A DNA stretch of 64,000 bases from Blastocystis sp. Blastoise (Eukaryota > Protista > Bigyra: Opalinata). The stretch spans positions 682,001-746,000 of the forward strand of contig JBBPEB010000002.1 in the NCBI GenBank assembly GCA_039096225.1. Direction: 5' to 3'. Shown in pieces: positions 1,755-35,998 of this stretch (position 1 is the first letter of the stretch; each line of letters opens with the position of its first letter). The notes beneath the pieces are model-generated. The model did not search any database, was not told where the DNA came from, and saw nothing but the letters and a program-made list of their open reading frames with translations. The translations under genes and the position numbers were made by a program.

Positions 1755-1828
1755 CTCTCCCAGACGGGATTGAACCGTCGACCTCCCGGTTAACAGCCGG
1801 ATGCTCTAACCAGCTGAGCTATGGAAGA
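1755..1828 (-). tRNA. tRNA-Asn (GTT)
   Basis: TCTTCCATAGCTCAGCTGGTTAGAGCATCCGGCTGTTAACCGGGAGGTCGACGGTTCAATCCCGTCTGGGAGAG gives a full cloverleaf with GTT anticodon, followed by a T-run terminator. Confidence 0.96.
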
Positions 1829-2733: not shown

Positions 2734-2926
2734 CAGTGCCTTCCCGACTTTTTGTGACACTTGCGGTGACTTTTTTTGACAGTCACATAAAGTCGCTTTA
2801 AGTCAGGCTTAATATGACTTAATATAATAATAAATATTTTTACACTGTCAAAAATTAACAAAAGTGTCACATTTTTCTGTGACAATTGCGGCACCGCAAA
2901 AAAAAAGGGCCTTTTGGAAGTCACTG
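2734..2926 (+). mobile_element. hAT MITE (193 bp), same termini as the 19-kb element
   Basis: Ends CAGTGCCTTCC / GGAAGTCACTG, perfect 8-bp TSD ATCATGTC (2726-2733, 2927-2934), subterminal GTGAC/GTCAC motifs. Confidence 0.92.
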
Positions 2927-3296: not shown

Positions 3297-4289
3297 TTCA
3301 TTTTTAATTCAGTTAGTTTATTTTTATAATATATATATATATATTCAATTTATTTGTCATTCTCTAATAATATCATTTTTATTTTGTTGCCTTTTATAAA
3401 TTTTTTTTTAAAGATGTTCTCTTTCTCTTCATTTAAATTTTATTTTATCCTATTTTATTTTTCACTTCATATAATCATGTTTATTATTTCTTTATTCATA
3501 GTACTATTCTATTTTAATAGAACAAATATTTTTATTATTATATAAGTTTTCGTTTTATACATCTTTTTATTTTTATTTAATAATTTAGATCTATATATAT
3601 ATACTTTTTTAAAAATTTAATACTTTATATTTAATAATTCCTTTTTATACTTCATATTATTAAATCATTACTATTATAAAGCAAATAGGCAAAAAAATTC
3701 CCATTGGTCAGTTTTTGGAAAATGCATTTGATTGGCTACTATATACTATAGTTTGTCGCCGCAACTCCTCTAAACTTACGGGGAGTTAACTTTTGGTTGA
3801 AACACAGTTCAATACGATATAAGCTGTAGTTGTGCACCGTATATTTGGATAAGCGATATTGTTTATAATTAAAAAGTTATTAATAAAAAAACAGAAAACA
3901 TGATTTTTGAGTCGTTTTTGATTGGCTCTTTGGGGTGACCCCGATAAAAATTGTTGACCAGACAATTGGAAAATAAACATGGGGTAAACTTGATTTTTTC
4001 TCAATCCCACAATATACGTTATCCGTGTTTATTCTTTATATTTATCTATTTTTTAATACTTTTTCATATTGAACACGTGAGGCCTTAACGGTCAAATTTA
4101 GATTCTTATTTTGACATGATATTCTGATTCAGGAGGTCCAAAAACCTAGGTGTACCAATTTTGAGCTCCTGAGGACGATTTTTGAGTGATCGATATTTTC
4201 TTCGATCTTCTTATAATTGACTAATATTGTAGTATTGTAATCAATAGGTCATCAAACTACTATAGTTAAAACAGAGTCTTTAAATAACA

Positions 4290-5760
4290 AGTTTGAGTAT
4301 GACAATTTTGAAAAATGTGAATTAAGTAGTCTTAGAGGATAAGATTCAATATAATGACTTTTATTTAATAAACTAGAGATAATACTCTATACTATGTTAA
4401 AAGGACAGTCAAAATTATGATGGTCAAAGTGTATGACCAAATGACAAAATGTGTCTTAAAAAGTAAAAGGGTTTCCATATGTGTTCAGAATCATATATAA
4501 AGTCTATTTTATGAATAAGAACTTTAAATAAATAGTTTAAGGTTGTCAAATTCAAAAGAATGTGTAAAACATAGTCTTAAACTGTGAATAAAAAATTTAG
4601 AGATATTAATTAGTATACAGCTGTAGTAGCTCTACAACATATCAAAAGTACAAAGAAAATAATTTTTAGAGAGTGGATGTGTGAGGTGTTGTGAAAGTTA
4701 TTTAAAAATATTTTTACTTCAGTTTATGTTAAATCGTGAATTTCGTGCACTGTAGAAAAATTGAGTCAAAAAATCAACTCTAAGGGTCTTAAATTTTGAA
4801 AAATGTAAAAATGAGTGACTTAGAGGACGAGATTCAAAATAAGAGCTTTTATTCATTAAACTAGAGTGTATGAGCTATATTATGTTAAAAGGAGGGACGA
4901 AAATATGTTGATCAAAGTGTATGAGCAAATGGTAAAGTCTTCTTAAAAAGTCTAAAGTGATGACTAATTTGTTTATATTGTCATATAAAGTCTACTATGT
5001 AAATATTAGCTTTTATAAATGTGTTTAAGTCTTTCAATTAGTAAAAATATGTTTAAAGTGAGTCATAAAATGAGAGTTTTAAGAAACGAGATATTGTTCA
5101 GTATACACTAAGAGACACTCTACAACATATCAAAAATATAGCAAAAACTATTTTTAGAGACTGCATGTGTAAAGGGTTGTGAGAGTTATTGAAAAAATAT
5201 TTTTACTTCAGTTTGTGCAAAATCGTGTTTTTGGAACACTGTAGAAAAATTAACTTCAAAAATCAACTCTAAGGGTCTTAATTTTTAAAAATGTGAAAAT
5301 GTTTGACTTAGAGGACGAGATTCAAAATTCCCCCTCACTTTCATATAACTAGACCACACACTCTATATTATATCAAAAGGAGGGACGAAAATATTTTGGT
5401 CGAAGTAAATGAGCAAATGCAAAAGGTTTATAAAATGTTTTAAAGTGATGACCAATGTGTAGCTAACGTTATACTGAGTATAGTATGTAAATATTAGCTT
5501 ATAAAAATGAGTTTAAGTGTGTCAACTTTTCATAATGTGTCAAAAAGGGTCTTTAAGAAAGAGATTCAAAACATTTACTTTTATTTAATAAATAGTATGA
5601 TAAACTCTATACTATATCAAAAGACTGACGGAAACTGTTTTGATACAGTGGATCTTGAATGGGTAAAGTCTATTTAAAAGTTACTATTTTGAGTTATTTA
5701 TGTTTAAAATCATTATTTGAGACGAATATAAAAATATTAACTTTTTAAATAATGTTTTAG
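4290..5760. repeat. degenerate internal tandem repeat of the Helitron, ~490-bp period, about 3 units
   Basis: CTTAGAGGA(T/C)(A/G)AGATTCAA recurs at ~4331, ~4819 and ~5306. Mirrored in copy 2. Confidence 0.75.
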
Positions 5761-6090
5761 TTGTCAAAGTGAAAATGAATGTTGACTTTGTTATACTTAA
5801 AACTTCAAAATTCTTTTAAGAAGTATTAAAATGAGTTAAAATTATTTTATTACGTTTATTTAAATGAATTTTATGACTTAAAAATACTTCAAAGTTCTTC
5901 ACATTGTTACTCATTTCTAAAATTATTGACTTTAAAACTCAAAAAAAGCTTTAAACAGTTGTATAATTATTAATAATGTCAAAATTGATTTAGAAAATAA
6001 TTTTTTATAATGAATATAACTCAAAACGTTGTTTTTTATTTAAAATAATTTCTTCTTTATTTTTATATATTATTGAAAAAGTATAATAGA

Positions 6091-6160
6091 TTCTTATATC
6101 AGGAATTGAACCTGATTACAATCATTTATTGATTATAACTCTCCATGTAGAGTATAAGAA
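6091..6160 (-). ncRNA. tRNA-like cloverleaf with B-box inside Helitron copy 1
   Basis: Closing stem TTCTTATA/TATAAGAA, CTCT/AGAG arm, 9-bp TTATAATCA/TGATTGTAA arm, T-arm TCAGG-TTCAATT-CCTGA. Expression unknown. Confidence 0.5.
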
Positions 6161-7034
6161 ATAAATAATAAATGATTAATAATAAATAATAATAAATAAT
6201 AATAAATAAATAATAAATAATTAATAATAAATAAATAATTAACAATAAATAATAAACAGTAAAAAATAAACAATATATAAAAATAATGAAGGATACTAAA
6301 AAACTAAACACACATATTTTCATGCAGCCGCGGTCCGGGGCCGTTAGGCACTGGACCTGCGGCGTGACCCTAGTATACATATATTACAAAAATATATAAT
6401 ATTTGATTATTCAAACATAATTATTCTTTTTATTCAGCACAACTCTTTAATATAATTCATTTAATTATTTTTTTTTACTTTTCTTTAAAAACTATATTAT
6501 TTTCAAAATCATGTATCAATTTTCTAATAACTTAAATGACAAATATAATTATCATTCTCTACCTAACTTAATGTGACTAAATAAATGAAATTAAAGTTAC
6601 TATTATTAAAGAAATATTTGGCCACTCATTATGGTGTTAATTTCTATGTAACAATTTTCTTTAGTGACATAAGAATGGATCACAAAATATTCTTTTTATA
6701 TTCAACTTTCTTAATCTTTGTTCTAACTATTATTTTTTTTATATCTTATTTTTTTTACTACTCTTCTTACTATGTATCTTTTTATAACCCTTATTAACAC
6801 TTTTATATTTCTGCATATTCTTTCTTCTTTCTATTATCTTACGATGCTACTTTCTATTAATATTACTCTTCATTTTTTTTAATTCTTGTAATTCATCATC
6901 ATTTTATTTATTTTTAATAATTTTTACAGTGCCTTCCCAACTTTTTATGACACTTGCGGCAACTTTTTTGTGACACTTTTTTTCAGCCAAGCTTAATTAG
7001 ACTGAAATAGGATTATTATAACAATCAACTAAAG

Positions 7035-7701
7035 TAGAGACTTAAGAGAAACCCGTGAAAAATTCTTCACGGGTTTCTCTCAGATTACAGTCAAAATTCT
7101 TTCACGGGTTTTAAAACCCGTGAAAAGAGAAACTGTGTTTCGAATAATAGACTTCATTTATCTTTTCCAATTATTGTTTAAAACATATAGAAAAATATAA
7201 ATTATTCATTTCGCCATATATAAAACACTTGAGCAAAAAATAAATAAAAATTAGCAGTCATTTCATTGTTATCAACATTTTTGTTATAACCTTTTTTTAG
7301 TTAACATAGATAATACTGTATGTCACACATGTTTCAAATGAACAACATAAAGAAAAGTAAAAAGAAACGTTGAGATAATGCAAGTCTTGTCTCACTTACC
7401 AAATATAAAACTTAAAAACATGTAAATATTCAATTTCAGTCATTGAAATAGATATGTGTCTACTCCTCTGATATTTAATAATTGTGTTTAGTCGTAATTG
7501 TAACAATTATGCTTTGAAAATTGGTTTTTCTTATTTTATAACAATAAACAGATTCTGTATTGACATTTTGCAAATCAATAAATCAATAATTACTTTTTTA
7601 CATAGAGTTTAACAAAAAAATATAAAAATAGAAACCCGTGAACTCTTTTCACGGGTTTTAAACCCGTGAAGAATTTTTCACGGGTTTCTCTTAAGTCTCT
7701 A
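7035..7701. mobile_element. second hAT-type MITE family (667 bp) nested in the giant hAT
   Basis: ~42-bp TIR TAGAGACTTAAGAGAAACCCGTGAAAAATTCTTCACGGGTTT, perfect 8-bp TSD AACTAAAG (7027-7034, 7702-7709), palindromic AAACCCGTGAA subterminal repeats. Confidence 0.93.
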
Positions 7702-7924
7702 AACTAAAGACTTCAATAATTTGAAATACTATAAATGATGATGTTAGAATACTTCATAATATATAGTTCTTATATGATAATAAATATAAATTATGACTAT
7801 AATCAATTATCCATTCCATTATAATTTCAAAATACTCTTAATATTTTATTATGACTTTTATTAGCATATATTAATTTTAAGTAACATATATAGTACAAAA
7901 TCAAAAAAAAAATAAACAATAATT

Positions 7925-8320
7925 ATGACTTTTAAAGAAACGTTGTTGTCAAAAATGTTTATAATGATTTAGAAAAGAATTCACAGTGATATTAGATGAT
8001 GTTTACTAAATTTTAAAAAATTAGGAGCAATATATGTAAGAAGAATTATTTGACAATTGTAATAATCGACATAGAACGTTCAAGTTTTCAATAAGTTAAG
8101 TAACTAGAACTAAAATACAGTTGATAATATCTTAAACAGATCAACATTTATATTTGAAAAATAAGAATGATTAATAACTGCCAGTAAACTGGGCTTATAT
8201 TTTTATAAAATAAATGAATCAAACAGAATAAGCTATATTGTATATATGCATTACAAATTTAAAATTATATGATACAATTACAAAACTGATCCTTATAAAA
8301 AGTTATTAGACAGCTTAAAT
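7925..8320 (+). pseudogene. possible decayed A32-like packaging ATPase remnant
   Basis: One frame reads KEFTVILDDVY*ILKN*EQYM*EELFDNCNNRHR, resembling Walker B plus the LF..RH motif. Multiple stops. Confidence 0.3.
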
Positions 8321-9299
8321 GTTGTTTCAATTATAGTGTATTGTGTATATTCATGCATCTTTCAACATTTTAATATAAATAAAAATAGCAAATTGTATTA
8401 TACCATACTCTAAGAAAGTGTCAGCCTAATATTCACAATGGAATGAAGTAAAGTATATCAAGTAATGGCCATGATCATACAAATATTATAGAATTAGATT
8501 AATCCAATAATAGAATAAATAATGTTTTATTAATTCATGAAAATTATTGGTTTTTCACTTAAAATTTGTAAAAATTCGATGATTATTCTATTTGTAAATT
8601 AAATTTATTATATTTAATTAATGGCTTCAATTTGGTTATTATCAATCTTAATCTATAATTCTATTGTATGAATAACTTTTATTTTTATTGTATTATATAG
8701 AAATGCTAAAAAAAGTTAATTCATTCTACACATTTCTATACAGTTGTCTTTATATAGATTATATACTGGCTCTTCAGTTAAGCATGTGTTCAACCCTTAC
8801 AATTCTAATATGAAAACAAATTCTTAGACATACGTATGTGCAATTGAAAGAAGATGTTGTCGTTGTTGATCATGTATTTCTTATGTTATTATTATTACTT
8901 TATATAGTAAACAAAATAGTTATGATTTCATGTATAATCCATCATTAGAAAAGACATTCGTTCTTTTCTTCTTTATAAATAAAATGGTCATTCATTTTTA
9001 ATATTTTTCAAGGTATTTTTAATTGAATCAATCATTTATATATATTATTAGACTATACAGCGGTGGATTCATGATAGTTACTAATTCTGATAAAGGTATA
9101 TACGTGTTAATTATTCGATTATGTTACATATCTTATTACTTTTATTAATAATTATTTTTGGTTTATTAAAATATTTATTTCTTTTGAGTCACATATTTAA
9201 TAATTCATTTATTATAATTAAATAATAGTTGATCTTTTCTTTCACCTTATAATTACTCTATAGGTTAAAATTTGTTAGTCTATTACTACATCATTTCAA

Positions 9300-10400
9300 A
9301 CTCTCTTAAATCCATAGTTACTCATACTTCTTGTTCTATATACCGTTTGGTCTATCTTGAACAGTCCTATTTTCATTTTTTAATAATTTATTCCCTTCAT
9401 TGTGTTTCATTTATTCTTAAATCACTATTATTAACAATTATCATCATTAGTTAAAATTTCATTAATAATTATTTTTAGCCTACTTTCTCTTCTAATTACA
9501 AACTGATTACTGTTATATATCAGCTTTTCATCTTCAATTGTGTCATCATTATTATACCTTATTTCATTTTGATTAAACTTGGTTCTTCTTCTTAATAATA
9601 TGTATTCTTTTAGAGTAACAACGACATTAGCAGTCTTTCCTATAATTGATTTCATTATCTTTTTAGCCCTATTATTATTTTTGTATACATAACATCTTCC
9701 TTGACTGCATAAGTATTATGTTACACTTCAATAACCATGCAAAATGTTTTCCTATATTTAAGCTAATTTTCTCTATTTATTGATAATATTTTAATAATTC
9801 AATATATTTATTATTTCCAGAATTATTAGTGATAATTGTCAATATACATCCTCTTTCATTAAAGTATCCTCAGTTCTGATGACTTCATTATTAACTCCTT
9901 CTTTCTTATCATCAAATATCTTAATACATATTGAATTTCACATTTTTTAATAATTGAGTTTGGATTTCTCTACAAATGTTTGATCATTCCTGTATTTTAT
10001 TTTCATTTCATTTCCATATCATTAGGGTTTTCATTATATACATCTTCCTAGTTTTTATATATATTTTTTGAATGACTTTTATTACTATTCTTGAACACAA
10101 TTACTTTTCCATTCTCATTTCTCTTTATATATATTAATATTAAAAAATTTCTTCGATATATCTTCCTTTGTGTTCTTCTTTAATAACGAGCTTATATATA
10201 CATTTACTCCTTTTATATGTTTCTATTCTTCTTATTCCAATTAGTTTTAATCTTATTTCATAATATATCTTAATTATATCCTTCGTATGATTCGTAGCTA
10301 TTATTACATATCTGATATGCAGTTCTCTTTATATTAATAGACTATTTTTTGGCAAAAACCTCTTTTATCAATTGTTTTCATTTTATTTAACATTTATTTC
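9300..10400 (-). pseudogene. possible decayed protein-primed family B DNA polymerase remnant
   Basis: AKKIMKSIIGKT (~9670-9630) resembles motif B KxxxNSxYGK. KRGFCQ...D..NNSYES (~10365-10285) resembles the region before and at motif A. No motif C found. Confidence 0.25.
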
Positions 10401-12708
10401 TATTTCAATTATAAAAGAAGTCTTCTATTCGTGATTTCATTTATTCTTTTCATTATAATAATAGTAGTATACACTAATTATTGATTTCTTATTGAGCTAC
10501 CAATGATTTTGTCATTATTTTAATTTATGCTAATATTATCAAAACACAAGTTTTCTTTTTCTAGTTTTTTCACTTTATATTTCGTCATTTGTTTATTTTT
10601 ATGATTTTTTTCAACTCTATCACAAGTTTTTATTCATTTAAAGCATTTCCTTTATCACTTTCTCTTATTATCAACCTCTCTTTCGTATAAATATAAGTGC
10701 CTACATATATAATATATGCTTTTAAGCTTCAACTATTATCTATTGCTATTCATCTTCTTTATCCTATTTTATTCACACAATTCGCTGTGTTTATACATAC
10801 TCATTTGAGTGCTTTATACAATTAAAACTTTATGTTTTTATTTAGCTATATAGGATTCTTAGATCAAAATTATTTCATTATTATCCTTATTTTAATGTCC
10901 TAGTTTGATTTCCATAATACTTATTATAATGATGTGAATTTATTAATTTGAAGATAGTATTAAATTTTTTATTTTTAGTTAATGATTTCTATTCTTCATC
11001 TTCTTATCAGTGTTCTGTCTCTACTATTCCTTTATTGACTAACTAATTTGAAATCTTCTTATGTGCCTTATACCATTATTAATCCATTCTTAACTTATGT
11101 CTTGTCGTTTTTATTATGTAAATATTATATTCTATTATTGGTTATATTTCTTCTACACTACGTTTTAGTTTCCCTTCTTTTCTTATTTAATTTTATGATT
11201 TTCATCAGTCACTACTATTTTACCTTCTCTCATTATTTGTTTCTATTTCAATATAAGTTATTTACATAAATGTACATTTATGTTAAAAATTTTATTTTAA
11301 AGGATATATAACTCCAACATCATCTTCCTTTAACATTAATTATGTAGTATCTAACTACTAATTTGCTTAGCATATTCATTTTGTATATCATCAAGATTTT
11401 AGTATTTCTTTTCTTGTTTACTGTCTTAACAAACATTTATTATTATTTCACAAATTATATATCACTCTTGATGGTTATTATTATTAATGCTTTTTTTTAT
11501 TTCATCTTATTTATTGGTATTTATTGTATTTACTAACCTGAGTTTTTGATACATTATTGCTATTATCATTTAATTACTGAATTATCTTAAATGAATTCAA
11601 TGCTTCTTATTATTTATTGTGATTATCGTCTTCATTCTTTCTTTAAATTAGTCTTCTTAGTTATACCTTATACATATAGAAATATTTTTTTAATGAATCA
11701 TATTGTTTAATGTTCGCTTACATTATTTTCATTGTTTATTTATTGACAATATTATTTCACTTTAAAAGAAATATATGATTTTTGTTTCTCGCTCTAATTT
11801 AATTATTATTAATTTATTCTCATTATCCTATTTTGGATTTATTTACTTATTTTAATTTAATTGAATTATCTTTTACTTATCATCACCTTGGTATATCATT
11901 TTAAGAATTAATATTACTATAATTTATAATTAGCATTTTTAAATATTTCTTTAAAACCTATTATTTGATTTGATGATAAAGTATTCTCTTTGCCACTCTG
12001 AAATCTCTCTTCTCTTTTATTTTCTAATTGTCGAATTAAAATAAATTGTATTCTTTTATATAATCATTTAAATATAATGTCTCGCTATACCTTAATATGT
12101 TGATAATAGTTAATTTAGCTAGTTATTAATCTTAGATACTATCATAAAGAGAATATGATTCACATAATCAAACGATTGATCATTCTTCAATTATCCTTTT
12201 TCGTATATATTTACGTTCCTTCACATTAATCATTAAATATATTCAACATTATTTCCTCTTTATTATAAGCAAACCTTTTTCATGGTATTGATGGACATTA
12301 GTTCTAAAGATACTAATAACAGAAGAAGAGTTATTATTTATAATATAATACACTATTATTATTTTATCATAAATATTTTCAATGATTTATATGGTTTCGG
12401 TTATGGAAATAAATTAGTTTGTAATATAATGGAAATTAATTCCTTTAACCACCGTTAATAATAGATTATTTCATGTCTATATTGTTGTGTATTCAAAAAT
12501 ATAATATATCTCTGCAAAATAGAATTATTATAATCATATTGATGTTTAGTAAGAATAGAGTTAAGGATATATATAAATATAGATATGTATAATCAGAGTA
12601 CGTTAAAAGAATTTAAACAAGAAGAATATATATAATAATATATAATTGATATATAATATAAAACAATTTTTATTCTTATCAGAAATAGCAATAGAATAGC
12701 ATATAATA

Positions 12709-15700
12709 CTAGTCACAATTTAATAGTGAACTTTTTAAGACCTTTGTGGTAAGGTTATTACTGAGTATTGGTAATCTAAGATCTTCCATATACTTTTCCA
12801 CAATTTCGCTGCTATTCAATGATGAAAGAAGATCTTGATTACACGTACTTGACATGTATGCTTGAAGCAACTCAGGCTTCATAGATGTTTGAAAACAGCT
12901 TTTTATTCTTCGTAAAGTACTAAAACAAGTCTCACTTTTGATACTTGTTGGGTTGACTGTTAAACATATTTGCACAGCGACCTCATACATTGTATAGTTT
13001 ATTTGATACTTTTTGCGGATCATTTCAATAATATCACTTATTGAAGATTCAAGAGAAATAATTGTTTTTAAATAATTTATCATCTGTCCTATTTTAGATA
13101 CAAAATCAATAGGAAGGCGAAAAGAGAATAGAGAATAGAAAGTCTGTATGCACAATAATTGAGTATCTTCACTAGTTCTGAGAATAAGATCAGGTGTAAC
13201 GAATAATGAAAGTGATAAATCCTTAATTATGTCTTTGTATAATCTTGTTATCATACTTTGTTTTATTCGTAATATCATAAGATTAATATTTGCTGAGAAT
13301 TGATAAATATTATTTCTATTATTTTCGAATATAATACTATATATATAATACTTTAAATAAAAAGAATATAAACTGAGTTATATATATATATATATATTCG
13401 TATAATATATGAAGATATATATGGAAATGTATATAAAAATTTCTATGGAAATGTATATGTATAGTTATATTAAATATATACTTATAATTTGATGAATCTA
13501 ATTTAGATTTTACATATAACTTCTTCTCATCTAAAGTTGTATTTGAAGTGGTTTCTTGAGATAATGACTCAATAGTACCAATCTGGTCAACATTATATGT
13601 TGAAATAATTCGTTTTTTGTCAGGATATAAAGAACGTATATCTTTAATAATATTTTCAGAGTTTCTAGTACAATTCTATATCTTCCGTGGTCTACCTCTT
13701 GATCTCTTAGTTTCAGATAATAATAAAGGAGCATTTGATTTGCTTTTACTAGAATTATTTGAATTATCTATATTCTTTAATGAATTATTAGTATTATGTA
13801 ACGGTGATAATTCGCTGTATAATATAGAATAAAATATATCTATATCTTCATCTAATATATTATAGATATTCATTATCGGTTTTTCTGGGCAAGATGTGAT
13901 TGATGTAGACGAAGAAGTAGGAAGAGAAAGAGAAGAAGATTTTTGTTTTGTCTCTTGTAACAATATAAATTGAATATATTTATCTGAATTAGTATTGTTT
14001 ATATTTGATACACATCTATTCATTCTTATATCTTTACTATGCTCATTAGCAGCAACAGGGGCCATGTTAATATCATTATCACGATTAATCAGAATGTTTT
14101 GCTTTACTCTATAATACATAATAATATATATATGAGAATTGTTATAGTAATTTAATTATGATATTTGAATATATATATATACCTTTTTGTTTGTGGAACT
14201 TGAAGACCTTTATATATATACGTTCTTTGTAAATTTTCCTTTTCCATTTCTTCCCTATAATTGAGAATTGAAAGTATTGACTCTGATATAGAAAATGAAG
14301 ACTGTTGTGGAAATGAAGTATCATAATTACTCAACGATTCTGAATTCAATATCTCTCCACTTTCAGAAAAATCATCGTGACTTGAATTTGTATCATCATA
14401 TGATAAATCATTTGCTGAATTTTCTATTATATCTATATTAAACTCATTAATATAATTAGGCATATTATTCATGATATTAATAATAGAGTCTATACAAGAT
14501 TTAGATTCTATGTTACTATACTTCTTAAGACATTGTGCTAAAGATTGAATATTAGAATATAAATAGTCTCTTCTATTAACAGCATTCTTATACATTTTCT
14601 TTATGGTTTGTGGAGAACATAGGTTAGAGAGACGATCGAATGTTTGGTTAATAATCCTAAGTGCTTCAGAAACAGTAAGAGTATCCGATTGTAACTGAGA
14701 AGATGCGTCATGCATAATACTAAGTAGATAAAACCAAGACTCAATATATAATTGAAATGATACCTCTCCTATTACCTTTAACATTTGTTCACAATTTTTG
14801 AAACATATATTATTTTTGTTATACGAATAATAATATAATAGAAATATTTTGCATAATGTCTGCTTTGAATGAATCATATAAGGATAAATAGAAAAATATC
14901 TAGCTATGAATCTTGTATCTGATATTTGTGGTAGAGTGTACAAGCTAAATCCATGATTCTTTATAAGAACCCTAATTCTTGAGCATCTTGACCAACTAGT
15001 AGCAATATTATTAATAGTATCTATGTAGAATGAAGAGTCAATAATACTTTTCTGTAAGTCCAAGAGAGAGAGATTAAGCATGTGTACACGGCATCCATAG
15101 CCGATTATTGAAGAAGGATTCATTGACAAGCCGGCAATAATACCAGATGTAATGCTTGTATTACAAATACAGTTGTCGTATGATATACAACATAAATTAC
15201 TTTTAATATAATTAAATTGCTCGAGACATTTAAGTATTGATTTTGCAATAAAAACACCTGATGGTGAAGTTTCTTCTAAGATATATAAAAAATACTGATG
15301 AATCTTAAAATTATCATCAATATAACGAATAGTAATTGTTAATTCTTCTAATTTTTGTGCTGTTGTTCCATCAGTTGTAAGACTATACAATTTGTTTCCA
15401 ACATTATTCTTTAATATTTCTATAAGGCTTTTTGAAATAATACTTATCCATTTTTGGATTGATCTTATTGATTTATATATCCTTTCATTCTCTATTAAAA
15501 ATTGATTAAATATAGGGTCATTTTTTCCAGTAAGCTTTAACAGTGTAAGAAACATACCACAATTAGTTGATGATAAAGTAGTAGTGTCACCATATATAGA
15601 GTGTATATGAGATAAACAAACACAAATACAATTATAAAACTTTGAAAGGAAATATTTCCATACTAGTTTATTATTCGTGGTTATACAATGATTTGTTGAA

Positions 15701-17142
15701 TTAGATATTAATGTTTGATTATTTTTCAAATTTTGAAGAAGACTTCTGAATTTCTTTAATGCTATTTTATGAGTACTTAAAGACATATGTGATTCTACTG
15801 TAGTGTATATATATTTATTTCCTGATAACATAGGATCTTCAGAATAAAGGAGACAAGCAATACAATACCATTTATGTTCATCTTGATTATATGATATAAA
15901 CTTATTGTATACTCCATTATGCTTCAAAATACTTTTAAGTGATGGATACTTTAGAGACTCAACATCATAGAACATATTATCATCAGCCAAATATGAAAGT
16001 AATTGTATTATATCACTTCTATTATTATTCAAGTAAATCTTCCATCTTTCATTCTTATTAAGAATAGAATTCATATCCTCACTCATAGAAGATTCAATAC
16101 TATTCTGCTTAACTAAACTGAAGAATTGATCATTACATTTAAGACAAGATTTAATATTCTCTATAGGATAATAATGAGAATTATCATCAACTTGTTTTGC
16201 TATTTCAGATGTTTTATAAGATATATTTTGACTAATATTAGTATTATATTGTGATTCGTCTCTTGCAGAAGATTTAGTATTCATATTTTTATAAGAATCA
16301 GGAAGAAGTAAATACATGTTATTAACAATATCTATTGTTGTGGAAGCAGAGAGTAGGAGAGATCCAAATGAATCTGAAATGTATCTTGATAAGGAAATTA
16401 GTTTGGCAGCAACAACTTCTATTGCTTTCGTATTTAAAGATGTAACTGTATAAACTTGTTCTAAATATAGTATATATATACTATAAACTATATATATACC
16501 TAAAGAATTATTATCCTTCTTCTTCTCCTCTTCTCTTTCAACTGATAATAAATCTACTATATATATTATTAATTATTAATTATTAATTATTAATTATTAT
16601 ATATATATACCTAAAGAATTATTATCCTTCTTCTTCTCATCTTCTCTTTCAACTGATAATAAATCTACTATATATATTATTAATTATTAATTATTATATA
16701 TATATACCTAAAGAATTATTATCCTTCTTCTTCTCCTCTTCTCTTTCAACTGATAATAAATCTACTATATATATTATTAATTATTAATTATTATATATAT
16801 ATACCTAAAGAATTATTATCCTTCTTCTTCTCCTCTTCTCTTTCAACTGATAATAAATCTACTATATATATTATTAATTATTAATTATTAATTATTAATT
16901 ATTATACATATGTATATACAACTAAACTGTAAGCTGGGGTCTTCTATGCTGCCATTCTTAGATATAATACCATCAATGAATTTTAATTCTTTCTTTAGGG
17001 ATACTTTATTACATATAGTATTGATAATTAGGTAATTAAAAAACATACCACATATATATCCATCTTCTTGACAATATACACTTATTTTCTCATTTGCTAA
17101 TCGTACAGATTTATAACCTTCTTGAATAATACGTTTTGACAA
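12709..17142 (-). pseudogene. intron-containing hAT transposase (ZMYM1/DUF4371-like), probably disrupted
   Basis: YSLTTDGTT (first D), ISYDN (second D), GCRVHMLNL (CxxH) and DTRF in ORF 14152-16317. C-terminal dimerisation domain PTSIKSETCFSTLRRIKS in 12709-13278. GTATA..TAG introns near 14110-14180, 13340-13480 and 16465-16920. In-frame TAG at 13676. Confidence 0.88.
16490..16900 (-). repeat. 4 tandem ~100-bp intron+microexon units in the transposase 5' region
   Basis: Unit ...TAG|TAGATTTATTATCAGTTGAAAGAGAAGAGGAGAAGAAGAAGGATAATAATTCTTTAG|GTATAT occurs 4 times. The exon is 57 nt (54 with the alternative NAGNAG acceptor). Confidence 0.85.
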
Positions 17143-18459
17143 AGATTTATTTACTAAATTACATATATTTATTTATATATACATATATAATACATGCTGC
17201 TATTTCTTTTAGTGTTTTTATTTTACCTTTATAAAACGCTTTTTGTTTATTCTCAATTTCTAGACATTTTTAATAATAATATCTAATGAATACCTTCAAT
17301 AATAAAAATAACATTGTAACCTGACTTTTGAACCATATCTATGAACTTCTTATATTCTTTTATTTTTTGAACTCTCCCATTCTATATTTAAAATGACTTT
17401 ACATAAAATATTAAATTACTTACATGTATTTTTGGTAAAAGATCGCTAATAGAGTGTTTATGATGAGTATCATCATAATAATTTTCAGCATTTTGTCGTA
17501 AATATTTTCTTACATATATTGGAAGCAAGTATATAATAAATGAAGCTGTTATCATGGTATATAATGCTATATAACCCTTTAAAAAAGTATATTTTATAAA
17601 AAAAAGAAAAGAATATTTTTCTTTTTTGCGATTAAAATGACTTTTTCAAAATATTTTTTAAATATATATTTCATTTATTCCTTTTAAGACTTAGACTATA
17701 GCCGTTTAGGTAGAAAATCATTTAAGAAGTCTTTGTTTTTTCATTTTATTCAGTCTTCATTAAAGTATTGAAAATTCTTTAAAATGATTATTGTTTTGTC
17801 TATACTTTTAAATATGTCTCCTATCCAATTTTGATAATTACGATGATTCCTAACGATTTAACAACTTTTTTACTAAATCCATTGAATGCTCAGTCGATCT
17901 GATGGACACTTGACTGCTATGGAAATAGTTGATATGTCACAATTTAGTTATATTAATAAATTTATGAACACTAAAGGATATGAAAGAAGTTTATATTCAT
18001 CAAATAATTAGTTTTTAAAAAGAAATTATAAAAATAAAATGTCAAAAATGAACACAACGTGGGTAGATCCTCAAGCTAAAGGAAACATTAAGGCTTCCCA
18101 ATCTCTTGGACTATATTTTTAATAAAATTTTAGTATATATTGTTTATATAATGTTAATAAACTTTATTTATTATTAATTTTATTCATTTTGTTTCACGAC
18201 TCTCAAAGTATAGTTTATCTACATTAGTTTAAAATAAATCTTACGTTAATAAGTTGAATTCATCCTAAAAGTATAGAAATAATCAACATCTTTATTATTG
18301 ATAAAATAAAATGCAATAAGACTATTTTAAAATTCTTAAAGTACAAATGTTCTTCTATATAGCATGAAAATGTCTTATATTGTATATTTAAAAAGAATCT
18401 TGATTAAATACTTTAAAAAGTTTAAATTTTATATCATTCTATTTTAATCATGTATATAT

Positions 18460-23750
<5,291 letters not shown>

Positions 23751-24545
23751 TGTTTATATATATATATAAGATAATAAATGATAACAACTGGATAATAATT
23801 CTAAAGTTGAACTATATATATATTATTTTCATAATCATAAATATCATAAATATAATCATAAATACTATAATAAATACACTAATAAATATAACAATAAATA
23901 TATACTCATTGATATTTTTATACATAAAAGGAACAACAAATAATTCTAAATATAAAAAGAATTTCACACGCAATTAAAGTATTGACCTCTACATCTATAT
24001 ATATAATTTGTTATCAAAAATGAAATAATATTCCTTTTAAATATAAGTAACAAAATAACGATCACCATAATAAACTAATATAAAAATAAATCAATGAAAT
24101 AATAATTATAGAAAGCAATTATAATATAATTAATATAAATACTAATCAAACCTTATAGATAACGCACAATAAATACTCTTGAAAAATAGTGACCATCCTG
24201 AACTATAAAATAAAGATAAATCAAATAAATATTACGAATGAAGAAACGAATTATATACAAAAAATACTTGTTGATCCATTTGAACCATCTGGAATGCTTA
24301 TAGATCCTGATTTCACAGTATAAAGAGTTGTTTAAAAGCTAAAAGCCTTGATACCTAAAGAAAGAAAGTAATTAAGTAAAGCAGATTATAAAAATTAAAA
24401 TAAATACTCAAGGCGAATACTCTTGATAAACTAAGTTAATTAAATTAAACCAAAATGAATGATCGTATCAAGAGATAATCAAAATAAATATATAAAAGAA
24501 CAAGTTTCATAAAGAGATGTTTTTCCAAGAAATAAAAATAAAAAA

Positions 24546-24620
24546 GCCTCTTGCGAGACTCGATCCAGCGACAATTACCATAATAGCTACAGCGCTGGTC
24601 AATTATACCAACCGATTTCT
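24546..24620 (-). pseudogene. degenerate tRNA-like remnant
   Basis: GC island with B-box-like GGATCGAGTC, tRNA length, T-run immediately downstream. Stems are poor. Confidence 0.4.
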
Positions 24621-24911
24621 CAATTTTATTTTTTCATGTGTTCTATATAATAAGTTTAAAATTATTTGATATCTTCAAATATTATATTTATGCTCTTTTA
24701 TTACATTTATAACATTCTAGAAATACTTAGAATTGTTTTTAAACAATAATTACTATTTTTTGAAAAAAAAAGTTTGTTGATATGTTGATTCTAAACTAAA
24801 AAGCAGATATCAATGATGTAAATAATGTTTACAGATAATAAAAATGAAACAAAGTTGATTTTAAATAAAATCATTGTAAATAGCAGTCAAAAGAAAAAGT
24901 TTAAAAAAATA

Positions 24912-24980
24912 GTTCCTCGTAAGATTCGATCCGTCCACTATGTAAAAATTTTATACGCACTAACCACTCGATCAAACAAC
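24912..24980 (-). pseudogene. degenerate tRNA-like remnant
   Basis: A-box-like GAGTGGTTAG, B-box-like GGATCGAATC, downstream T-run. Confidence 0.4.
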
Positions 24981-25958
24981 TTCTCTATTATATGTGTCAT
25001 GTAATCATATAATAATTATAAAACTAGCGACTACTAACCGTTTTTTTATTTTTTTATTTTTAAACATAAAAACAATATATTTTATGATATAAATATTATA
25101 AATGTGTTGTGTGACTTATTCTTCATATAAAATGCATTTTAAAAGCATTTTATAAGGCTATTAAAAATCATTTTGTTGGACGTATTGTTTTTTCAAATCC
25201 AGCTTTTGTTCATTGTATTGTTTTTTGTTTGATTTTTGAAAAATAATATTTTAATATGCTTTTCGTTTATTTAATTTTTATTACTTGTCAGGGTCTATCT
25301 GTAGAGTTCCTACAAGACTACTTCGTGATATTTATATAAAAATAAAAACTTTTTAATTACATTATTATATTATATATTATTATTTTTGCATTTATTGAAT
25401 TTTTTTTGATTGTAAACATAAGTAAAACTCTTTATCATAACCTACAAAAAAATATATTAAGCAATTGACTTTTGTCACAAATAATTTTTATTTGTCACCC
25501 AAATTAACACAAATAGTCATACATCCAACTCATGTTCGTTGTTATTTGATGACTGATGAACTTTTCAGTCATGTATTTGTCACAACATGTGTCACAAAAA
25601 TCTTCTTAGATTACTTATTTCAAAACAGTTATACATTATATATCAAAATGATATGTTTTTAGTCAAAAACTGTCACGTCATAATATAATAGTCAATGAAT
25701 GAATTATCTTTTTTATGTCACCAGGTCCTTTTTTTGTGAAAAGTGTGTAAATCGACGTGTCTTGATGAGCTGAGTTTGAAAATATTTTTTTTAGATTTTT
25801 AAAAAGAAAAACAAAAAAGTTATTTATCATTTTTCATTTTTGTGTCACAAATTTTGGTGACAATTGCGACGCCGCAAAAAAAAAGGGCCTTTTGGAAGTC
25901 GCTGAATTTTTATTTTTAATAATATTACAATTTCTTCAGTTCTTTTCAATAATTACTA

Positions 25959-28668
25959 CTAGGGTCACGCCGCAGGTCCGGGGCCTAACGGCACCGGACC
26001 GCGGCTGCATAAAATAATAACAGTTTGGCTTTTATTTTCTTTTTTTCATTATTATATATTATTTATTATTATTTATTATTTATTATCTATTACATATTAT
26101 ATAGTATATATTATTATTTATTATTTATTATTTATTATATATTATATATTATATATTACTTTAATAACACTTCTTATACTCTATATGGAGAGTTACAATC
26201 ATTTATTGATTGTAATCAGGTTCAATTCCTAATATAAGAATTAAATAAACTATTTAAATAATATCAAAAAAATAAAAAACAATACTTGAAAGAAAATAAA
26301 AAAACTATTTTGAATCATTATATATATTATTTATTATTTTTAAAATATATTTTGTATTTAGTAACAATTAAACAACTTTCTTAAGCATTTTTTGAGTTTT
26401 TAAAGTCAATAACTTTGGAAATGAGTCACAATGTGAAGTACTCTCAAGTATTTTTAAGTCATAAAATTCATTTAAATAAGCATAATATAATAATTTTAAC
26501 TCATTTTAATACTTTTTAAAAGAATTTTGAAGTTTTAAGTATAACAAAGTCAACATTCATTGTCACTTTGACAACTAAAACATGGTTTAAAAAGTTAATA
26601 TTTCTACAGTCGTCTCTAATAATGATCTTAAACACAAATAACTTGAAAATGTAACTTTTAAAGAGACTTTACCCATTCAAGATCCACTGTATCAAAATAA
26701 TTTCCTTCAGTCTTTTGATATAGTATAGAGTTTATCATACTATTTATTAAATAAAAGTAAATGTTTTGAATCTCTTTCTTAAAGACCCTTCTTGATACAT
26801 TATGAAAAGTTTACACACTTAAAATCATTTTTATAAGCTAATATTTACACACTATACTTAATAAGACCATAGCTACACATTGGTGATCACTTTAAAACAT
26901 TTTATAAACCTTTTGCATTTGCTCATTTACTTCGACCAAAATATTTTCGTCCCTCCTTTTGACATAATATAGAGTATGTGCTCTAGTTATATGAAAGTGA
27001 GGGGGGAATTTTGAATCTCGTCCTCTAAGTCAATCATTTTCACATTTTTAAAAATTAAGACCCTTAGAGTTGATTTTTGAAGTTAATTTTTCTACAGTGT
27101 TCCAAAAACACGATTTTGCTCAAACTGAAGTAAAAATATTTTTTCAATAACTCTCACAACCCTTTACACATGCAGTCTCTAAAAATAGTTTTTGCTATAT
27201 TTTTGATATGTTGTAGAGTGTCTCTTAGTGTATACTGAACAATATCTCGTTTCTTAAAACTCTCATTTTATGACTCTCTTTGAACATATTTTTACTAATT
27301 GAAAGGCTTAAACATATTTTTAAAAGCTAATATTTACATAGTAGACTTTATATGACAATATAAACACATTAGTCAACACTTTAGACTTTTTAAGGACACT
27401 TTACCATTTGCTCATACACTTTGATCAAAATATTTTTGTCCCTCCTTTTAACATAATATAGCTCATACACTCTAGTTTAATGAATAAACACTCTTATTTT
27501 GAATCTCGTCCTCTAAGTTAGTCATTTTTACATTTTTTTAAATTTAAGACCCTTAGAGTTGACCTTCTGACTCAATTTTTCTACAGTGCACGAAATTCAC
27601 GATTTAACATAAACTGAAGTAAAAATATTTTTAAATAACTTTCACAACACCTCACACATCCACTCTCTAAAAATTATTTTCTTTGTACTTTTGATATGTT
27701 GTAGAGCTACTACAGCTGTACACTAATTAATATCTATAAATTTTTTATTCATAGTCTAAGACTATGTTTTACACATTCTTTTGAATTTGACAACCTTAAA
27801 CTATTTATTTAAAGTTCTTATTCATAGAATATACTTAATACATGATTCTATACACATATTCAAACCCTTTTACTTTTTAAGACACATTTTGTCATTTGGT
27901 CATACACTTTGACCTTCATAATTTTGACTCTTCTTTTAACATAGTATAGAGTTATAAGTCCAGTTTACTAATTAAAAGTCATTATATTGAATCTCTTACT
28001 CTAAGACCACTTAATTCACATTTTTCAGAATTGTGACACTCAAACTCATTATTTTAAAACTTTGTTTTAACTATAGTAGTTTGAGGACCTATCAATTACA
28101 ATACTGTAATATTAGTCGATTATAAGAAGATCGATGAAAATATCGATCACTCAAAAATCGTCCTCAGGAGCTCAAAATTGGTACACCTAGGTTTTTCGAC
28201 CTCCTGAATCAGAATATGCTGTCAAATTAAGAATCTAAATTTGACCGTTAAGGCCTCACGTGTTCAATATGAAAAAGTATTAAAAAATAGATAAATATAA
28301 AGAATAAACACCGATAACGTATATTGTGGGATTGAGAAAAAATCAAGTTTACCCCATGTTTATTTTCCAATTGTCTGGTCAACAATTTTTATCGGGGTCA
28401 TCCCAAAGAGCCAATCAAAAACGACTCAAAAATCATGTTTTCTGTTTTATTAATAACTTTTTAATTATTAATAATATCGCTTAACCAAATATACGGTGCA
28501 AAACTACATGTTATATCCTATTGAACTGTGTTTCAACCAAACATTAACTCCCCGTAAGTTTAGAGGAGTTGTGTCCACAAACTATAGCATACATTAGCCA
28601 ATCAAATGCATTTTCCAAAAACTGACCAATGGGAATTTTTTTGCCTATTCTCATATATATAGTAATGA
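25959..28668 (-). mobile_element. non-autonomous Helitron, copy 2 (inverted relative to copy 1)
   Basis: A|TCATTACTAT at 28668, GC hairpin plus CTAG|T at 25959. Colinear with and highly similar to 3665-6373 throughout. Confidence 0.88.
26171..26240 (+). ncRNA. tRNA-like cloverleaf with B-box inside Helitron copy 2
   Basis: TTCTTATACTCTATATGGAGAGTTACAATCATTTATTGATTGTAATCAGGTTCAATTCCTAATATAAGAA. Confidence 0.5.
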
Positions 28669-29276
28669 TAATTATATACCTTTCCCTTTTTTGTTGCTAA
28701 ACATGGATTACGAGAAACTTCATCCATTACTCCATCACAGATACTACAGAAGACCTTATCTATTCCATCGACATTCAAAATATAAAATAAATTTTCTTCT
28801 TTTTTTGTCTTTTTATTTAGGAATGTTGCTTTCCAAATCAGTGAATTTTCTATATATAATACTAAAGAATATATAGTATTATCCATACTTGATGATATAT
28901 TTTTCTGCTTAATTTCATGAATACAATCATGAGTTGTAGTTGGAAGTTGGTTTGACGATGTTTGGGGAACACTTAAGACCTATAAGTAAATGCATTGCAA
29001 AAAAATATGTACTTTACTTTTTGAGTTTTTTCGTTACTAGTATCATCGGACAGTATCTCCGACGTATCTGAGCAATCTAAATCCATTATATGATGGAGAA
29101 ATACAAAGAAATAATAATAATAAAATTATCAAAGTCATGACAACTCCCATAAAAAATCGATTTGACTTTTAAAAAACAGCAGTGACTTTTCCCATAAATT
29201 TTTAGTAATCATGAGTCACGATGACTAAAAAAATCACGACTATAGTCACATAAACCTTAGTCATTGCTCATCTCTA
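28669..29276 (-). mobile_element. probable end of another hAT element, cut by the Helitron
   Basis: TAGAGATGAGCA terminus at 29276, GTCA(C/T)GA subterminal motifs, and a downstream KVFCSIC (BED-finger-like) ORF fragment. Partner TIR not found. Confidence 0.35.
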
Positions 29277-34541: not shown

Positions 34542-34604
<63 letters not shown>

Positions 34605-34719
34605 GTATAATAATAATAATAATAATAGTAATAATAATATATGTATACATAAAATATTTGCTATAATAATACTTTACAGCTAGCATTATCTTCATAAGTT
34701 TTTGGCATATGATTGATTG

Positions 34720-34771
<52 letters not shown>

Positions 34772-35241
34772 ATAGATTTTGAATTGACTTCTTTTTCGAT
34801 AGCATTCGGAAAAGAATTCGGAAGGTATGATATATACGTGAATTTCTTTATTATTACATATATAGGAAGTAGTAGGTTGAATTGATTTCATAATATATTT
34901 CATCATAAACTTATTCTGATTGGATAAAACATTATCCAATGCAGATGATTGGATACTATGCTTCTCACACAATGTTTTAAAGATATATGCTCATTATATA
35001 AATAATCAACTGCTTTTGGACCTATATATATATATACATAATAATAATAAATATAATAAAAAGTTTTATAATAATACTAGATTCTTGAATTATGTTCAAA
35101 ACATATACATACCTGTTACTGCTTCTACTCTTGTTATTCCCGCGGAAATAGATGAATTCTTGAGAGTTATAAATGGATAAATATCTTTAATGTTTTCACA
35201 ATGAGTTCCTATAATAATAATAGTGTAATAATAGATATAAT

Positions 35242-35274
<33 letters not shown>

Positions 35275-35695
35275 CTTACCTAAACATAATTATTTACTGA
35301 TTCCTTCCACTTCAACTCCTCGAACAGTCTCTTTGTAATTATCCGCAAATATACCAGTATAACCACGGGAAATCGAGTCAGTATAGGACATATAATCATA
35401 ATGAACAGAATTAGCTATATATATATAATATATATATTATATATATTATATTATAACTATTATATACTATTCTATTATATTATATAGTATATTATGTTAT
35501 ACTATTATATTATAACTCCTATATACATCGTTAAGTAATAATATTCATGCTTTTCTCAACGTTCTTTAATACTTGTGATAAGCTATTTTGATCCCCTTTA
35601 AATGAATAATCCAATCGCATTATAGAAGGATCTACATGACTTCCTGCCTGAAGAGGAGAAGTTAGAGGGAATTTTGGACTCAAAGGATTAATAAG

Positions 35696-35735
<40 letters not shown>

Positions 35736-35998
35736 ATTATTATATATATATACATGGATCATTAATCTATCTTCGAAGTAGTTCATGAAGGAGATGAGTA
35801 GAAGTGTGATGAATAGAGGTCTGACTATATATATATATAGATAGAGAAAAATAAAAGCAAAATAAGAATAAAAATATTAATATAAATATATATACGTTCA
35901 ATTATCAGAGTTAACAGAGAGATTGACACGTGCGTGAAGGAGGGACTTGGGAACAGAAATGGAAGTCTTTAATAATATAAAATGTTCATTCACACGAA

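What the first reader, a model, noticed from the sequence alone, without database searches (positions are those of the whole stretch)
6927..25904. ~19-kb hAT transposon with transposase and host-gene cargo
Seen: both ends match those of a 193-bp MITE with its own clean TSD, and an identical 8-bp AATTTTTA flanks the 18,978-bp interval. Inside are a hAT transposase, a multi-exon UTP20 fragment, a nested MITE, tRNA-like remnants and decayed coding DNA. Known: typical hATs are a few kb long, and Pack-type capture is mostly described in plants. Inference: the interval moved as one unit, making it a giant cargo-mobilising hAT in a protist. Caveat: the TSD is pure A/T, so a chance match is more likely than usual.
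Basis: partly seen in the sequence, partly recalled or inferred. Interest (0 to 1): 0.8.

Follow-up and report, generated by a model that had tools for sequence, protein, structure and literature searches.

The report
Giant hAT transposon carrying UTP20 fragment
This 19-kb stretch is a real cut-and-paste (hAT) jumping gene of a tortoise-gut Blastocystis, four to eight times the usual hAT size, that carries its own transposase gene plus a multi-exon piece of the host ribosome-assembly gene UTP20 and has moved as one unit.

Summary
Confirmed. Window 6927-25904 is an 18,978-bp hAT-superfamily transposon of a tortoise-gut Blastocystis, probably strain Rus-B ('Blastoise'). It is bounded by imperfect CAG termini, clustered TGTCAC subterminal repeats and an 8-bp duplication (AATTTTTA).

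A collinear 23.6-kb copy on another contig ends at exactly the same bases. It has a different duplication (TTTTAAAT) and unrelated flanks, so the whole unit transposed. Six relatives of 8.3-16.9 kb and about 21 MITEs of 193 bp share the termini. Every one I could read has its own 8-bp duplication.

A ~4.85-kb multi-exon transposase gene on the minus strand is a divergent DUF4371 / hAT-dimerisation type. This copy has one private nonsense codon; the other copy has none.

The cargo is ~2.8 kb of the single host UTP20 gene on contig 34. It holds four to five exons with introns (about positions 620-1120 of ~2,700), is 89-98% identical to the host, and is split by a 2.65-kb insert of unknown origin.

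The same cassette sits in a 16.2-kb, ~18-copy hAT that this scan reported earlier on other DNA of this genome, and in a CACTA-like element. The tRNA-like remnants were not supported. This is an unusually large new member of a known kind.

The parts
2734..2926 (+). 193-bp MITE of the same family, outside the element. Its 8-bp duplication is ATCATGTC, and about 21 copies occur in the genome.
6919..6926 (.). Left copy of the 8-bp target-site duplication, AATTTTTA.
6927..7034 (+). Left terminus. The imperfect TIR CAGTGCCTTCC is followed by subterminal ATGACAC / TGCGGC / GTGACAC motifs. It is 100% identical in the C28 and C21 copies.
7035..7701 (.). Nested 667-bp MITE of another family. It has ~42-bp TIRs starting TAGAGACTTAAGAG and an 8-bp duplication AACTAAAG at 7027-7034 and 7702-7709. 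It is absent from the C28 copy, so it inserted later.
7702..12708 (.). About 5 kb of element-specific DNA with no ORF over 74 aa and no Pfam hit. In this genome it is found only in this copy and the C28 copy.
12709..17555 (-). Transposase gene. Exons lie at about 17555-17292 (with a ~42-bp intron inside), 17148-17050, 16570/16428-14182, 14110-13472 and 13341-12709. Motifs read in the sequence: TTDGTT at 15378-15361, SYDNC at 15183-15169, CRVHMLNL at 15093-15070, an AT-hook GRPRK, and KSETCFS at 12939-12919 in the dimerisation exon.
13676..13678 (-). Private nonsense codon. It reads TAG here and CAG in the C28 copy. It lies upstream of the C-terminal hAT dimerisation exon.
16489..16890 (.). 97-bp tandem repeat inside the transposase gene region. 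There are about 4 units here, and the C28 copy has about 384 bp more.
17556..18446 (.). Element-specific spacer upstream of the transposase start. It occurs only in the two full copies.
18447..23906 (-). UTP20-derived cargo. Exon pieces lie at 23414-23100 (UTP20 profile positions 620-661), 19985-19506 (688-761), 19600-18779 (820-1013), 18824-18612 (1023-1079) and 18608-18447 (1083-1120). The cargo is collinear with host C34:680433-677590 at 89-98% identity and keeps its introns.
20373..23022 (-). 2.65-kb insert inside the cargo that is absent from the host gene. It has coding-like patches on the minus strand but no Pfam hit and no match to the UTP20 profile, and its origin is unknown. The (TA)n/(TAT)n microsatellite at 19987-20168 lies just beside it.
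23907..24533 (.). Module shared at 68-72% identity with many other loci (core 23753-24509). One such locus is window 38012-38590, inside the CACTA-like element at 32887-39163.
24534..25904 (+). 1.37-kb right arm, conserved at 84-95% in the 8.4-kb family, in the 16.2-kb hAT family and next to several transposase paralogues. There are seven TGTCAC repeats in the last 430 bp. The terminus reads ...GGAAGTCGCTG.
25905..25912 (.). Right copy of the 8-bp target-site duplication, AATTTTTA.

Best explanation
The interval is a recently mobile hAT-superfamily DNA transposon of a tortoise-gut Blastocystis.

**Shown:**
- It has defined termini and an 8-bp target duplication.
- A second full copy lies elsewhere with its own duplication.
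- A family of shorter relatives and MITEs uses the same termini.
- It holds a multi-exon gene for a divergent DUF4371 / hAT-dimerisation transposase.
- It holds a ~2.8-kb, intron-containing piece of the single host UTP20 gene.

**Inferred:**
- The transposase binds the clustered TGTCAC subterminal repeats and the CAG termini. It excises the whole 19-24 kb and reinserts it with an 8-bp staggered cut, as in other hATs.
- The window copy now carries a nonsense codon ahead of the dimerisation/catalytic exon. It is therefore probably moved in trans by the copy on contig 28, which also plausibly drives the MITEs and perhaps the 8.4-kb relatives.
- The UTP20 piece was taken up at the DNA level, because its introns are kept. 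The likely route is template switching during repair or fusion of neighbouring insertions.
- It has since been passed between transposon backbones by recombination or gene conversion. That would explain the mosaic divergence between the two copies.
For: **Unit mobility**
- The window and C28 copies are collinear from 6927 to 25904 and have identical terminal 40 bp.
- Their duplications differ (AATTTTTA and TTTTAAAT) and their flanks are unrelated.
- No internal termini exist.

**Family**
- Five ~8.4-kb copies and one 16.9-kb copy each have their own perfect 8-bp duplication, including TACGCAAA and CCTTTTAT.
- About 21 MITEs share the termini.

**Transposase**
- It is 52-56% identical to three annotated Blastocystis 'Blastoise' proteins that carry precomputed DUF4371 and FAM200-ZBED5 RNase-like hits.
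- Sub-threshold Pfam hits fall in the right order: DUF4371 at E 1e-3 and Dimer_Tnp_hAT at E 4e-4. The same hits appear in a paralogue.
- Language-model features score 0.94 to ZMYM1 / ZNF862 / DUF4371 clusters.
- The C28 copy has no in-frame stop. The window copy has one, TAG versus CAG.
- TGTCAC occurs seven times in the last 430 bp, against about 0.04 expected.

**Cargo**
- Pfam UTP20_N matches at E 1.7e-23.
- Five collinear minus-strand pieces hit a profile built from 20 full-length UTP20 proteins.
- Contig 34 is the only locus with the rest of UTP20_N and the downstream UTP20 domain.
- The DNA is collinear with C34 at 89-98% identity.

**Mosaicism**
- Divergence between the two copies is 0.1-0.5% at 13-18 kb, 0.8-2.9% at 8-13 kb and 4-9% at 20-25.9 kb.
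Against: - The transposase's Pfam hits are below the curated cut-offs, and the whole protein gives none.
- A sequence search of solved structures found no hAT transposase.
- The AlphaFold model was unusable, with pLDDT 34. The protein-level hAT assignment therefore rests on weak profile hits, language-model features and motifs that I recognise from memory.
- Only two full copies exist, and this one has a nonsense codon.
- The 4-9% divergence of the right third shows that the two copies are not simple products of one recent jump.
- The cargo is closer to the host gene (98% at 18469-19554) than to the 16.2-kb family (94%). A single capture without later gene conversion does not explain that.
Host collinearity therefore comes from hit coordinates alone.
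- There is no empty site, excision footprint or expression evidence.
Confidence: 0.86

Rival explanations
1. The two long copies arose by segmental duplication or recombination, not transposition. On this view the A/T-only 8-mer flanking the window copy is a chance match.
For: The duplication is pure A/T in a 77% A+T genome. The two copies differ by 4-9% in the right third, which does not fit a clean copy-and-paste history.
Against: Similarity between the copies starts and stops exactly at the CAG termini. The C28 copy has its own perfect 8-bp duplication, and the flanks are unrelated. Six relatives and the MITE also have perfect 8-bp duplications, several containing G/C. The chance of an 8-bp match is about 1e-4, or about 4e-3 for pure A/T flanks.
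Confidence: 0.03
2. The interval is a fossil. It is a dead composite of nested elements that no longer moves, and its transposase gene is a pseudogene.
For: - The transposase exon 14110-13472 has a nonsense codon.
- The last UTP20 exon is split here but whole in C28.
- A later MITE is nested at 7035-7701.
- Only two full copies exist.
Against: - The stop is private to this copy, and the C28 copy has none in any exon.
- The 4.8-kb gene region differs by only 0.1-0.5% between the copies, introns included.
- The 721-aa ORF is open in both copies.
- The termini are identical.
The family was therefore active very recently, even if this copy is now non-autonomous.
Confidence: 0.08
3. The UTP20 cassette was not captured by this hAT. 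Another element, such as the CACTA-like family or the 16.2-kb hAT, captured it and it reached this hAT second-hand by nesting or recombination. On this view the element is a carrier, not the capturer.
For: - The same cassette, including the 2.65-kb insert that the host lacks, lies in the 16.2-kb family at 93-95% identity. There it has a longer UTP20 piece, reaching UTP20_N position 269.
- A CACTA-like element on contig 21 carries UTP20 profile positions 616-661 and 717-761.
- The adjacent module recurs in the CACTA-like element at window 32887-39163.
Against: - In the 16.2-kb family the cassette comes together with 1.2 kb of this family's right arm, minus its last 115 bp. That points to a truncated element of this type nested there, not the reverse. 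An earlier follow-up of the scan read it the same way.
- No termini of the other families lie inside the window element.
Confidence: 0.3

Closest known systems
hAT superfamily (Ac / Buster / Tip groups; for example Hermes, TcBuster, BuT2)
   Same: - 8-bp target duplications, short imperfect TIRs that begin with CAG, and subterminal short repeats.
- A transposase with a DUF4371 region and a C-terminal hAT dimerisation domain. BuT2 also carries DUF4371 (PMC3942097).
- Derived MITEs.
   Different: - hATs are described as 2.5-5 kb (PMC3942097). This one is 19.0 kb and its sister copy is 23.6 kb.
- The transposase is about 1,300 aa spread over five or more exons, and too divergent for Pfam's thresholds.
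- No clear Ac-type or Buster-type duplication consensus appears among the nine duplications read.
Histone-H3-carrying hAT of Pseudocercospora fijiensis and related fungi (PMC6710886)
   Same: A transposase-bearing hAT with TIRs and 8-bp duplications that has taken up part of a housekeeping gene and amplified it. It is also oversized for a hAT, at 9.5-9.9 kb.
   Different: - The fungal element has hundreds of copies, all inactivated by RIP (repeat-induced point mutation), and it captured a coding sequence.
- Here there are two full copies. About 18 more cassette copies ride in another hAT.
- The cargo is a multi-exon piece that keeps its introns, the element is twice as long, and the host is a stramenopile.
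Pack-TYPE transposons (Pack-MULE, Pack-CACTA, Pack-hAT) of plants (PMC8903248)
   Same: DNA-level uptake of host gene fragments between conserved termini. The acquired DNA lies internally. The neighbouring-insertion and repair models of capture apply equally here.
   Different: Pack-TYPE elements are by definition non-autonomous and usually small. This element carries its own transposase gene and 5 kb of private non-coding DNA, and it is not in a plant.
16.2-kb, ~18-copy hAT of the same genome, reported earlier by this scan (s1-718338, s1-734341)
   Same: It shares window 18469-25789 at 93-95% identity. That stretch includes the UTP20 cassette and most of the right arm.
   Different: - Its terminus is different, CAGGGTGTGCCAAAACTGCGC.
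- It has 460 bp of private end sequence.
- According to the scan's earlier notes it encodes its own transposase. My 721-aa query found no match at its copies, so that enzyme is a different or far more divergent one.
- It lacks this element's last 115 bp, left 11.5 kb and transposase.

Membership tests
hAT superfamily | 8-bp target-site duplication | tested here: met
   Perfect 8-bp duplications flank the window copy, the C28 copy, five ~8.4-kb copies, the 16.9-kb copy and the MITE.
hAT superfamily | Short terminal inverted repeats (10-25 bp), typically starting with CAG or TAG | tested here: met
   CAGTGCCTTCC versus CAGCGACTTCC match at 9 of 11 bases. These termini are conserved in all family members.
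hAT superfamily | Transposase with the C-terminal hAT dimerisation domain (PF05699) | tested here: inconclusive
   The hit scores 20.5-20.7 bits (E 4e-4) against a cut-off of 21.4. It lies in the last exon and is reproduced in paralogue P0002 at 19.6 bits. The position and the SE..FS motif are right, but the score is just under threshold.
hAT superfamily | RNase-H-like DDE catalytic core (the DUF4371 / FAM200-ZBED5 region in this branch) | tested here: inconclusive
   - DUF4371 scores 18-19.5 bits (E 1e-3), below the cut-off of 32.1.
- Precomputed PF14291 and PF27073 hits are listed on the paralogues.
- Language-model features score 0.94 to DUF4371 clusters.
- The motifs TTDGTT, YDNC and C.vH.LNL are invariant in the alignment.
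- The structure model failed and no solved hAT transposase matched by sequence.
hAT superfamily | Clustered subterminal short repeats (transposase binding sites) | tested here: met
   TGTCAC occurs seven times in the last 430 bp and GTGACAC / ATGACAC occur in the first 50 bp, against four TGTCAC sites in the remaining 18.5 kb. Binding itself was not tested.
Buster group of hAT | Target duplication consensus nnnTAnnn (recalled from Arensburger et al. 2011, as cited in PMC3942097) | tested here: not met
   Only 2 of the 9 duplications read have TA at positions 4-5. The sample is small and the genome is A/T-rich, so I do not assign the element to a group.
Pack-TYPE (Pack-hAT) | Non-autonomous element that lacks a transposase gene | tested here: not met
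   A ~4.85-kb transposase gene is present. It shows no in-frame stop in the C28 copy.
Pack-TYPE (Pack-hAT) | Carries fragments of host genes between the termini | tested here: met
   UTP20 exons are collinear with the single host gene on contig 34.

The most novel reading that the evidence does not exclude
This genome may trade multi-kilobase cargo cassettes freely between unrelated transposon backbones. The same UTP20 cassette, with the same 2.65-kb insert, sits in two hAT lineages with different termini and in a CACTA-like element. The two full copies of this hAT are themselves mosaics.

If repair-templated cassette exchange after hAT excision is frequent here, these giant hATs would be a general vehicle for shuffling and amplifying host exons in a protist. 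The UTP20 piece is still open as a 241-284-aa frame in 20 or more copies. It could be expressed and could interfere with, or be co-opted into, ribosome biogenesis.
Probability: 0.22. Interest if true: 0.7.

Novelty: new member of a known kind. Interest (0 to 1): 0.5.

Why it matters
**Size.** hAT elements are textbook 2.5-5-kb transposons. Here a natural family moves 19-24 kb at a time, which bears on the natural cargo limit of hAT transposases.

**Host.** Host-gene capture by DNA transposons is documented mainly in plants and some fungi. This is a clear case in a stramenopile gut symbiont. Its genome paper reports only a 5.6-7.5% transposon content, with no family described (PMC10690189).

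**Link to the earlier finding.** This element is the complete, transposase-bearing form of the 'second transposon' whose truncated piece fills more than half of the 16.2-kb, ~18-copy hAT found earlier by this scan. It therefore supplies the missing ends and enzyme for that story.

**Annotation.** The 20 or more UTP20-like fragments, and the transposase paralogues, should not be counted as host genes.

Tried and rejected
- **Transposase searches.** Whole-protein Pfam scans of the 721-aa ORF and of paralogues P0001-P0003 found nothing. Only sub-fragments gave sub-threshold hits.
- **Solved structures.** Neither the protein nor a four-sequence profile matched a transposase.
- **Structure model.** AlphaFold on the four-sequence alignment gave pLDDT 34, so I ran no fold search.
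- **UTP20 ORFs.** The word search with the 263-aa ORF was blank. The atlas search with the 160-aa upstream exon was uninformative. A profile of 20 full-length UTP20 proteins settled the question.
- **Metagenome scan** for transposase relatives came back blank. This says little, because it relies on two peptide patterns.
- **Pfam on 20 further ORFs** across the element found nothing. I therefore found no support for the 'fossil Polinton' idea noted for 7900-12400. That stretch is simply private to the two copies.
- **tRNA-like remnants.** ARAGORN and Rfam were both negative.
- **Rejected reading.** I first took the contig-34 sequence upstream of UTP20_N for a neighbouring transposon, which would have meant capture by flank transduction. 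The UTP20 profile showed that those pieces are UTP20 exons.
- **Large inverted repeat around the element.** 3664-6385 pairs with 28669-25948. It is two Helitron-like 3' ends and is not part of the hAT.
- **Not done.** All searches were exon by exon and by reference.


Full report
**Source of the window.** The window is contig 15, bases 682001-746000, of a 33.34-Mb, 34-contig assembly with 23% G+C. The transposase's only close relatives are proteins of 'Blastocystis sp. Blastoise'. Size, contig number and G+C match the Russian-tortoise isolate Rus-B in PMC10690189 (33 contigs, 33.3 Mb, 23.1%). I therefore take the host to be that tortoise-gut Blastocystis or a very near relative. That paper reports 5.6-7.5% transposable elements but describes no hAT family. 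A full-text search for Blastocystis together with hAT and transposon found nothing relevant.

**Check of the observation.**
- The element begins CAGTGCCTTCC at 6927 and ends GGAAGTCGCTG at 25904. AATTTTTA lies on both sides.
- The 193-bp MITE at 2734-2926 has the duplication ATCATGTC. It shares about 42 bp with the left end and about 63 bp with the right end.
- A degenerate terminus pattern finds exactly these four sites in the window and none inside the element.
- The chance of an 8-bp flank match is about 1.2e-4 at this composition.

**Genome-wide comparison.** This was the decisive test.
- The terminus patterns occur at about 30 places.
- C28:220278-243914 is collinear with the window element from the first base to the last, at 91-100% identity. 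It has the duplication TTTTAAAT and unrelated flanks.
- Five ~8.4-kb elements and one 16.9-kb element share the left 80 bp and the right 1.37 kb. Each has its own perfect 8-bp duplication.
- The interval is therefore one mobile unit, not two independent insertions.

**Anatomy.** The parts run from left to right.
- A 108-bp left end.
- A later 667-bp MITE of another family at 7035-7701, with the duplication AACTAAAG. It is absent from C28.
- 5 kb of private DNA with no ORF over 74 aa, found nowhere else in the genome except C28.
- The transposase gene on the minus strand, 17555 to 12709.
- A 0.9-kb private spacer.
- The UTP20 cassette, 23906 to 18447 on the minus strand.
- A ~0.6-kb module shared with other repeat families.
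- A 1.37-kb right arm with seven TGTCAC repeats in its last 430 bp.

C28 differs from the window copy by a 4.5-kb insertion near window 10270 and by extra units of a 97-bp tandem repeat.

**Transposase.**
- tblastn with the annotated paralogues maps exons at 17555-17292, 17148-17050, 16428-14182, 14110-13472 and 13341-12721.
- Pfam gives only sub-threshold hits, but in the right order: DUF4371 at E 1e-3 and Dimer_Tnp_hAT at E 4e-4. They are reproduced in a paralogue.
- Language-model features point to ZMYM1 / ZNF862 / DUF4371 clusters at 0.94.
- The blocks TTDGTT, YDNC, C.vH.LNL and SE..FS are invariant or present. From memory I recognise these as the hAT catalytic and dimerisation motifs. That is a recalled resemblance, not a test.
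- The structure model failed.
All searches were exon by exon.
- The window copy has TAG at 13678-13676 where C28 has CAG. C28 has no in-frame stop in any exon.
- At least seven paralogues at 41-63% identity lie elsewhere. Several sit between similar ends 16-28 kb apart. Large size therefore seems to be typical of this hAT group in this genome.

**Cargo.**
- Pfam UTP20_N matches the 263-aa ORF.
- The exhaustive protein search found 288 UTP20 relatives. The ORF aligns to about residues 750-1050 of proteins of 2,400-2,800 aa.
- A profile of 20 of these proteins hits five minus-strand pieces in collinear order, covering positions 620-1120. The last two pieces form one ORF in C28.
- Only contig 34 holds the rest of UTP20_N (to position 538) and the downstream UTP20 domain.
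- Contig 34 is collinear with window 23906-23022 (89%), 20373-20150 (91%), 19997-19489 (96%) and 19554-18469 (98%).
- The cargo is therefore about 2.8 kb of the host gene with its introns kept. It is broken by a 2.65-kb insert that the host lacks and whose origin I could not find.

**Relations to other elements.**
- The stretch 18469-25789 recurs at 93-95% identity in at least 18 near-identical copies of another element. That element ends CAGGGTGTGCC... and has 460 bp of private end sequence.
- The scan's earlier notes describe this element as a 16.2-kb hAT with its own transposase, more than half of which is a truncated second transposon. The window element is that second transposon in complete form.
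- A CACTA-like element on contig 21 has termini like those of window 32887-39163. It carries UTP20 positions 616-661 and 717-761 plus the insert.
- The two full copies diverge by 0.1-0.5% across the transposase region but by 4-9% in the right third. The cargo is closer to the host than to the 16.2-kb family. Both facts point to recombination or gene conversion among copies, and the order of events is not settled.

**Comparison with the literature and verdict.**
- hATs are described as 2.5-5 kb with 8-bp duplications (PMC3942097).
- A 9.5-9.9-kb hAT carrying captured histone H3 is known in Pseudocercospora (PMC6710886).
- Pack-hATs and a neighbouring-insertion capture model are described in maize and rice (PMC8903248).

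The element is a hAT by its duplications, termini and subterminal repeats, and probably by its protein. It is not a Pack-TYPE element, because it has a transposase gene. I rate it a new, unusually large member of a known kind, of moderate interest.

Noticed in passing
window 3664-6385 and 25948-28669: Two ~2.7-kb copies of a Helitron-like repeat, 91% identical and in inverted orientation. Each ends in a G+C-rich hairpin followed by CTAG, and the two 3' ends point inward at the hAT, 541 bp and 43 bp from its ends. Other copies exist in the genome (in loci L005 and L041).
   Followed up: partly
window 32887-39163: CACTA-like element with a 13-bp TIR, CACTATGAGGCAG, and an apparent 3-bp duplication, ATA. 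Its module at ~38012-38590 is about 71% identical to hAT 23846-24405, and a sister copy on contig 21 carries UTP20 exons instead.
   Followed up: partly
window ~40250-64000: Three tandem copies of a 10.1-10.7-kb unit at 91-100% identity. They contain very long minus-strand ORFs (up to 1,537 aa) that are rich in (ATT)n-encoded repeats.
   Followed up: no
G000 contig ends, for example C14:18104-19781, C13:1344897-1346595, C26:1301211-1302840, C17:13149-14769 and C31:1362621-1364365: At least 15 loci near contig ends match the UTP20-derived 1.5 kb (window 18448-20000) at only 75-77% identity. They often have arrays of the same short A/T-rich repeat between the two halves. This looks like an older UTP20-fragment family in subtelomere-like positions.
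   Followed up: no
L066:3178-7684 (C28:222955-227461): A 4.5-kb insertion that is private to the C28 copy of the element, at the point matching window ~10270. It was not characterised.
   Followed up: no
window 16489-16890: The 97-bp tandem repeat inside the transposase gene varies in copy number. There are about 4 units here, and C28 has about 384 bp more. The open frame of the large exon runs into it.
   Followed up: partly
window 24534-25789 and loci L040-L045: The ~1.3-kb right arm is kept at 83-95% identity in at least four otherwise different element families. It also lies next to several transposase paralogues. That is much longer than binding sites alone would need, so a promoter or another function is possible.
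   Followed up: no
window 1755-1828: The only tRNA gene in the window is tRNA-Asn (GTT) on the minus strand. It lies outside the element.
   Followed up: no
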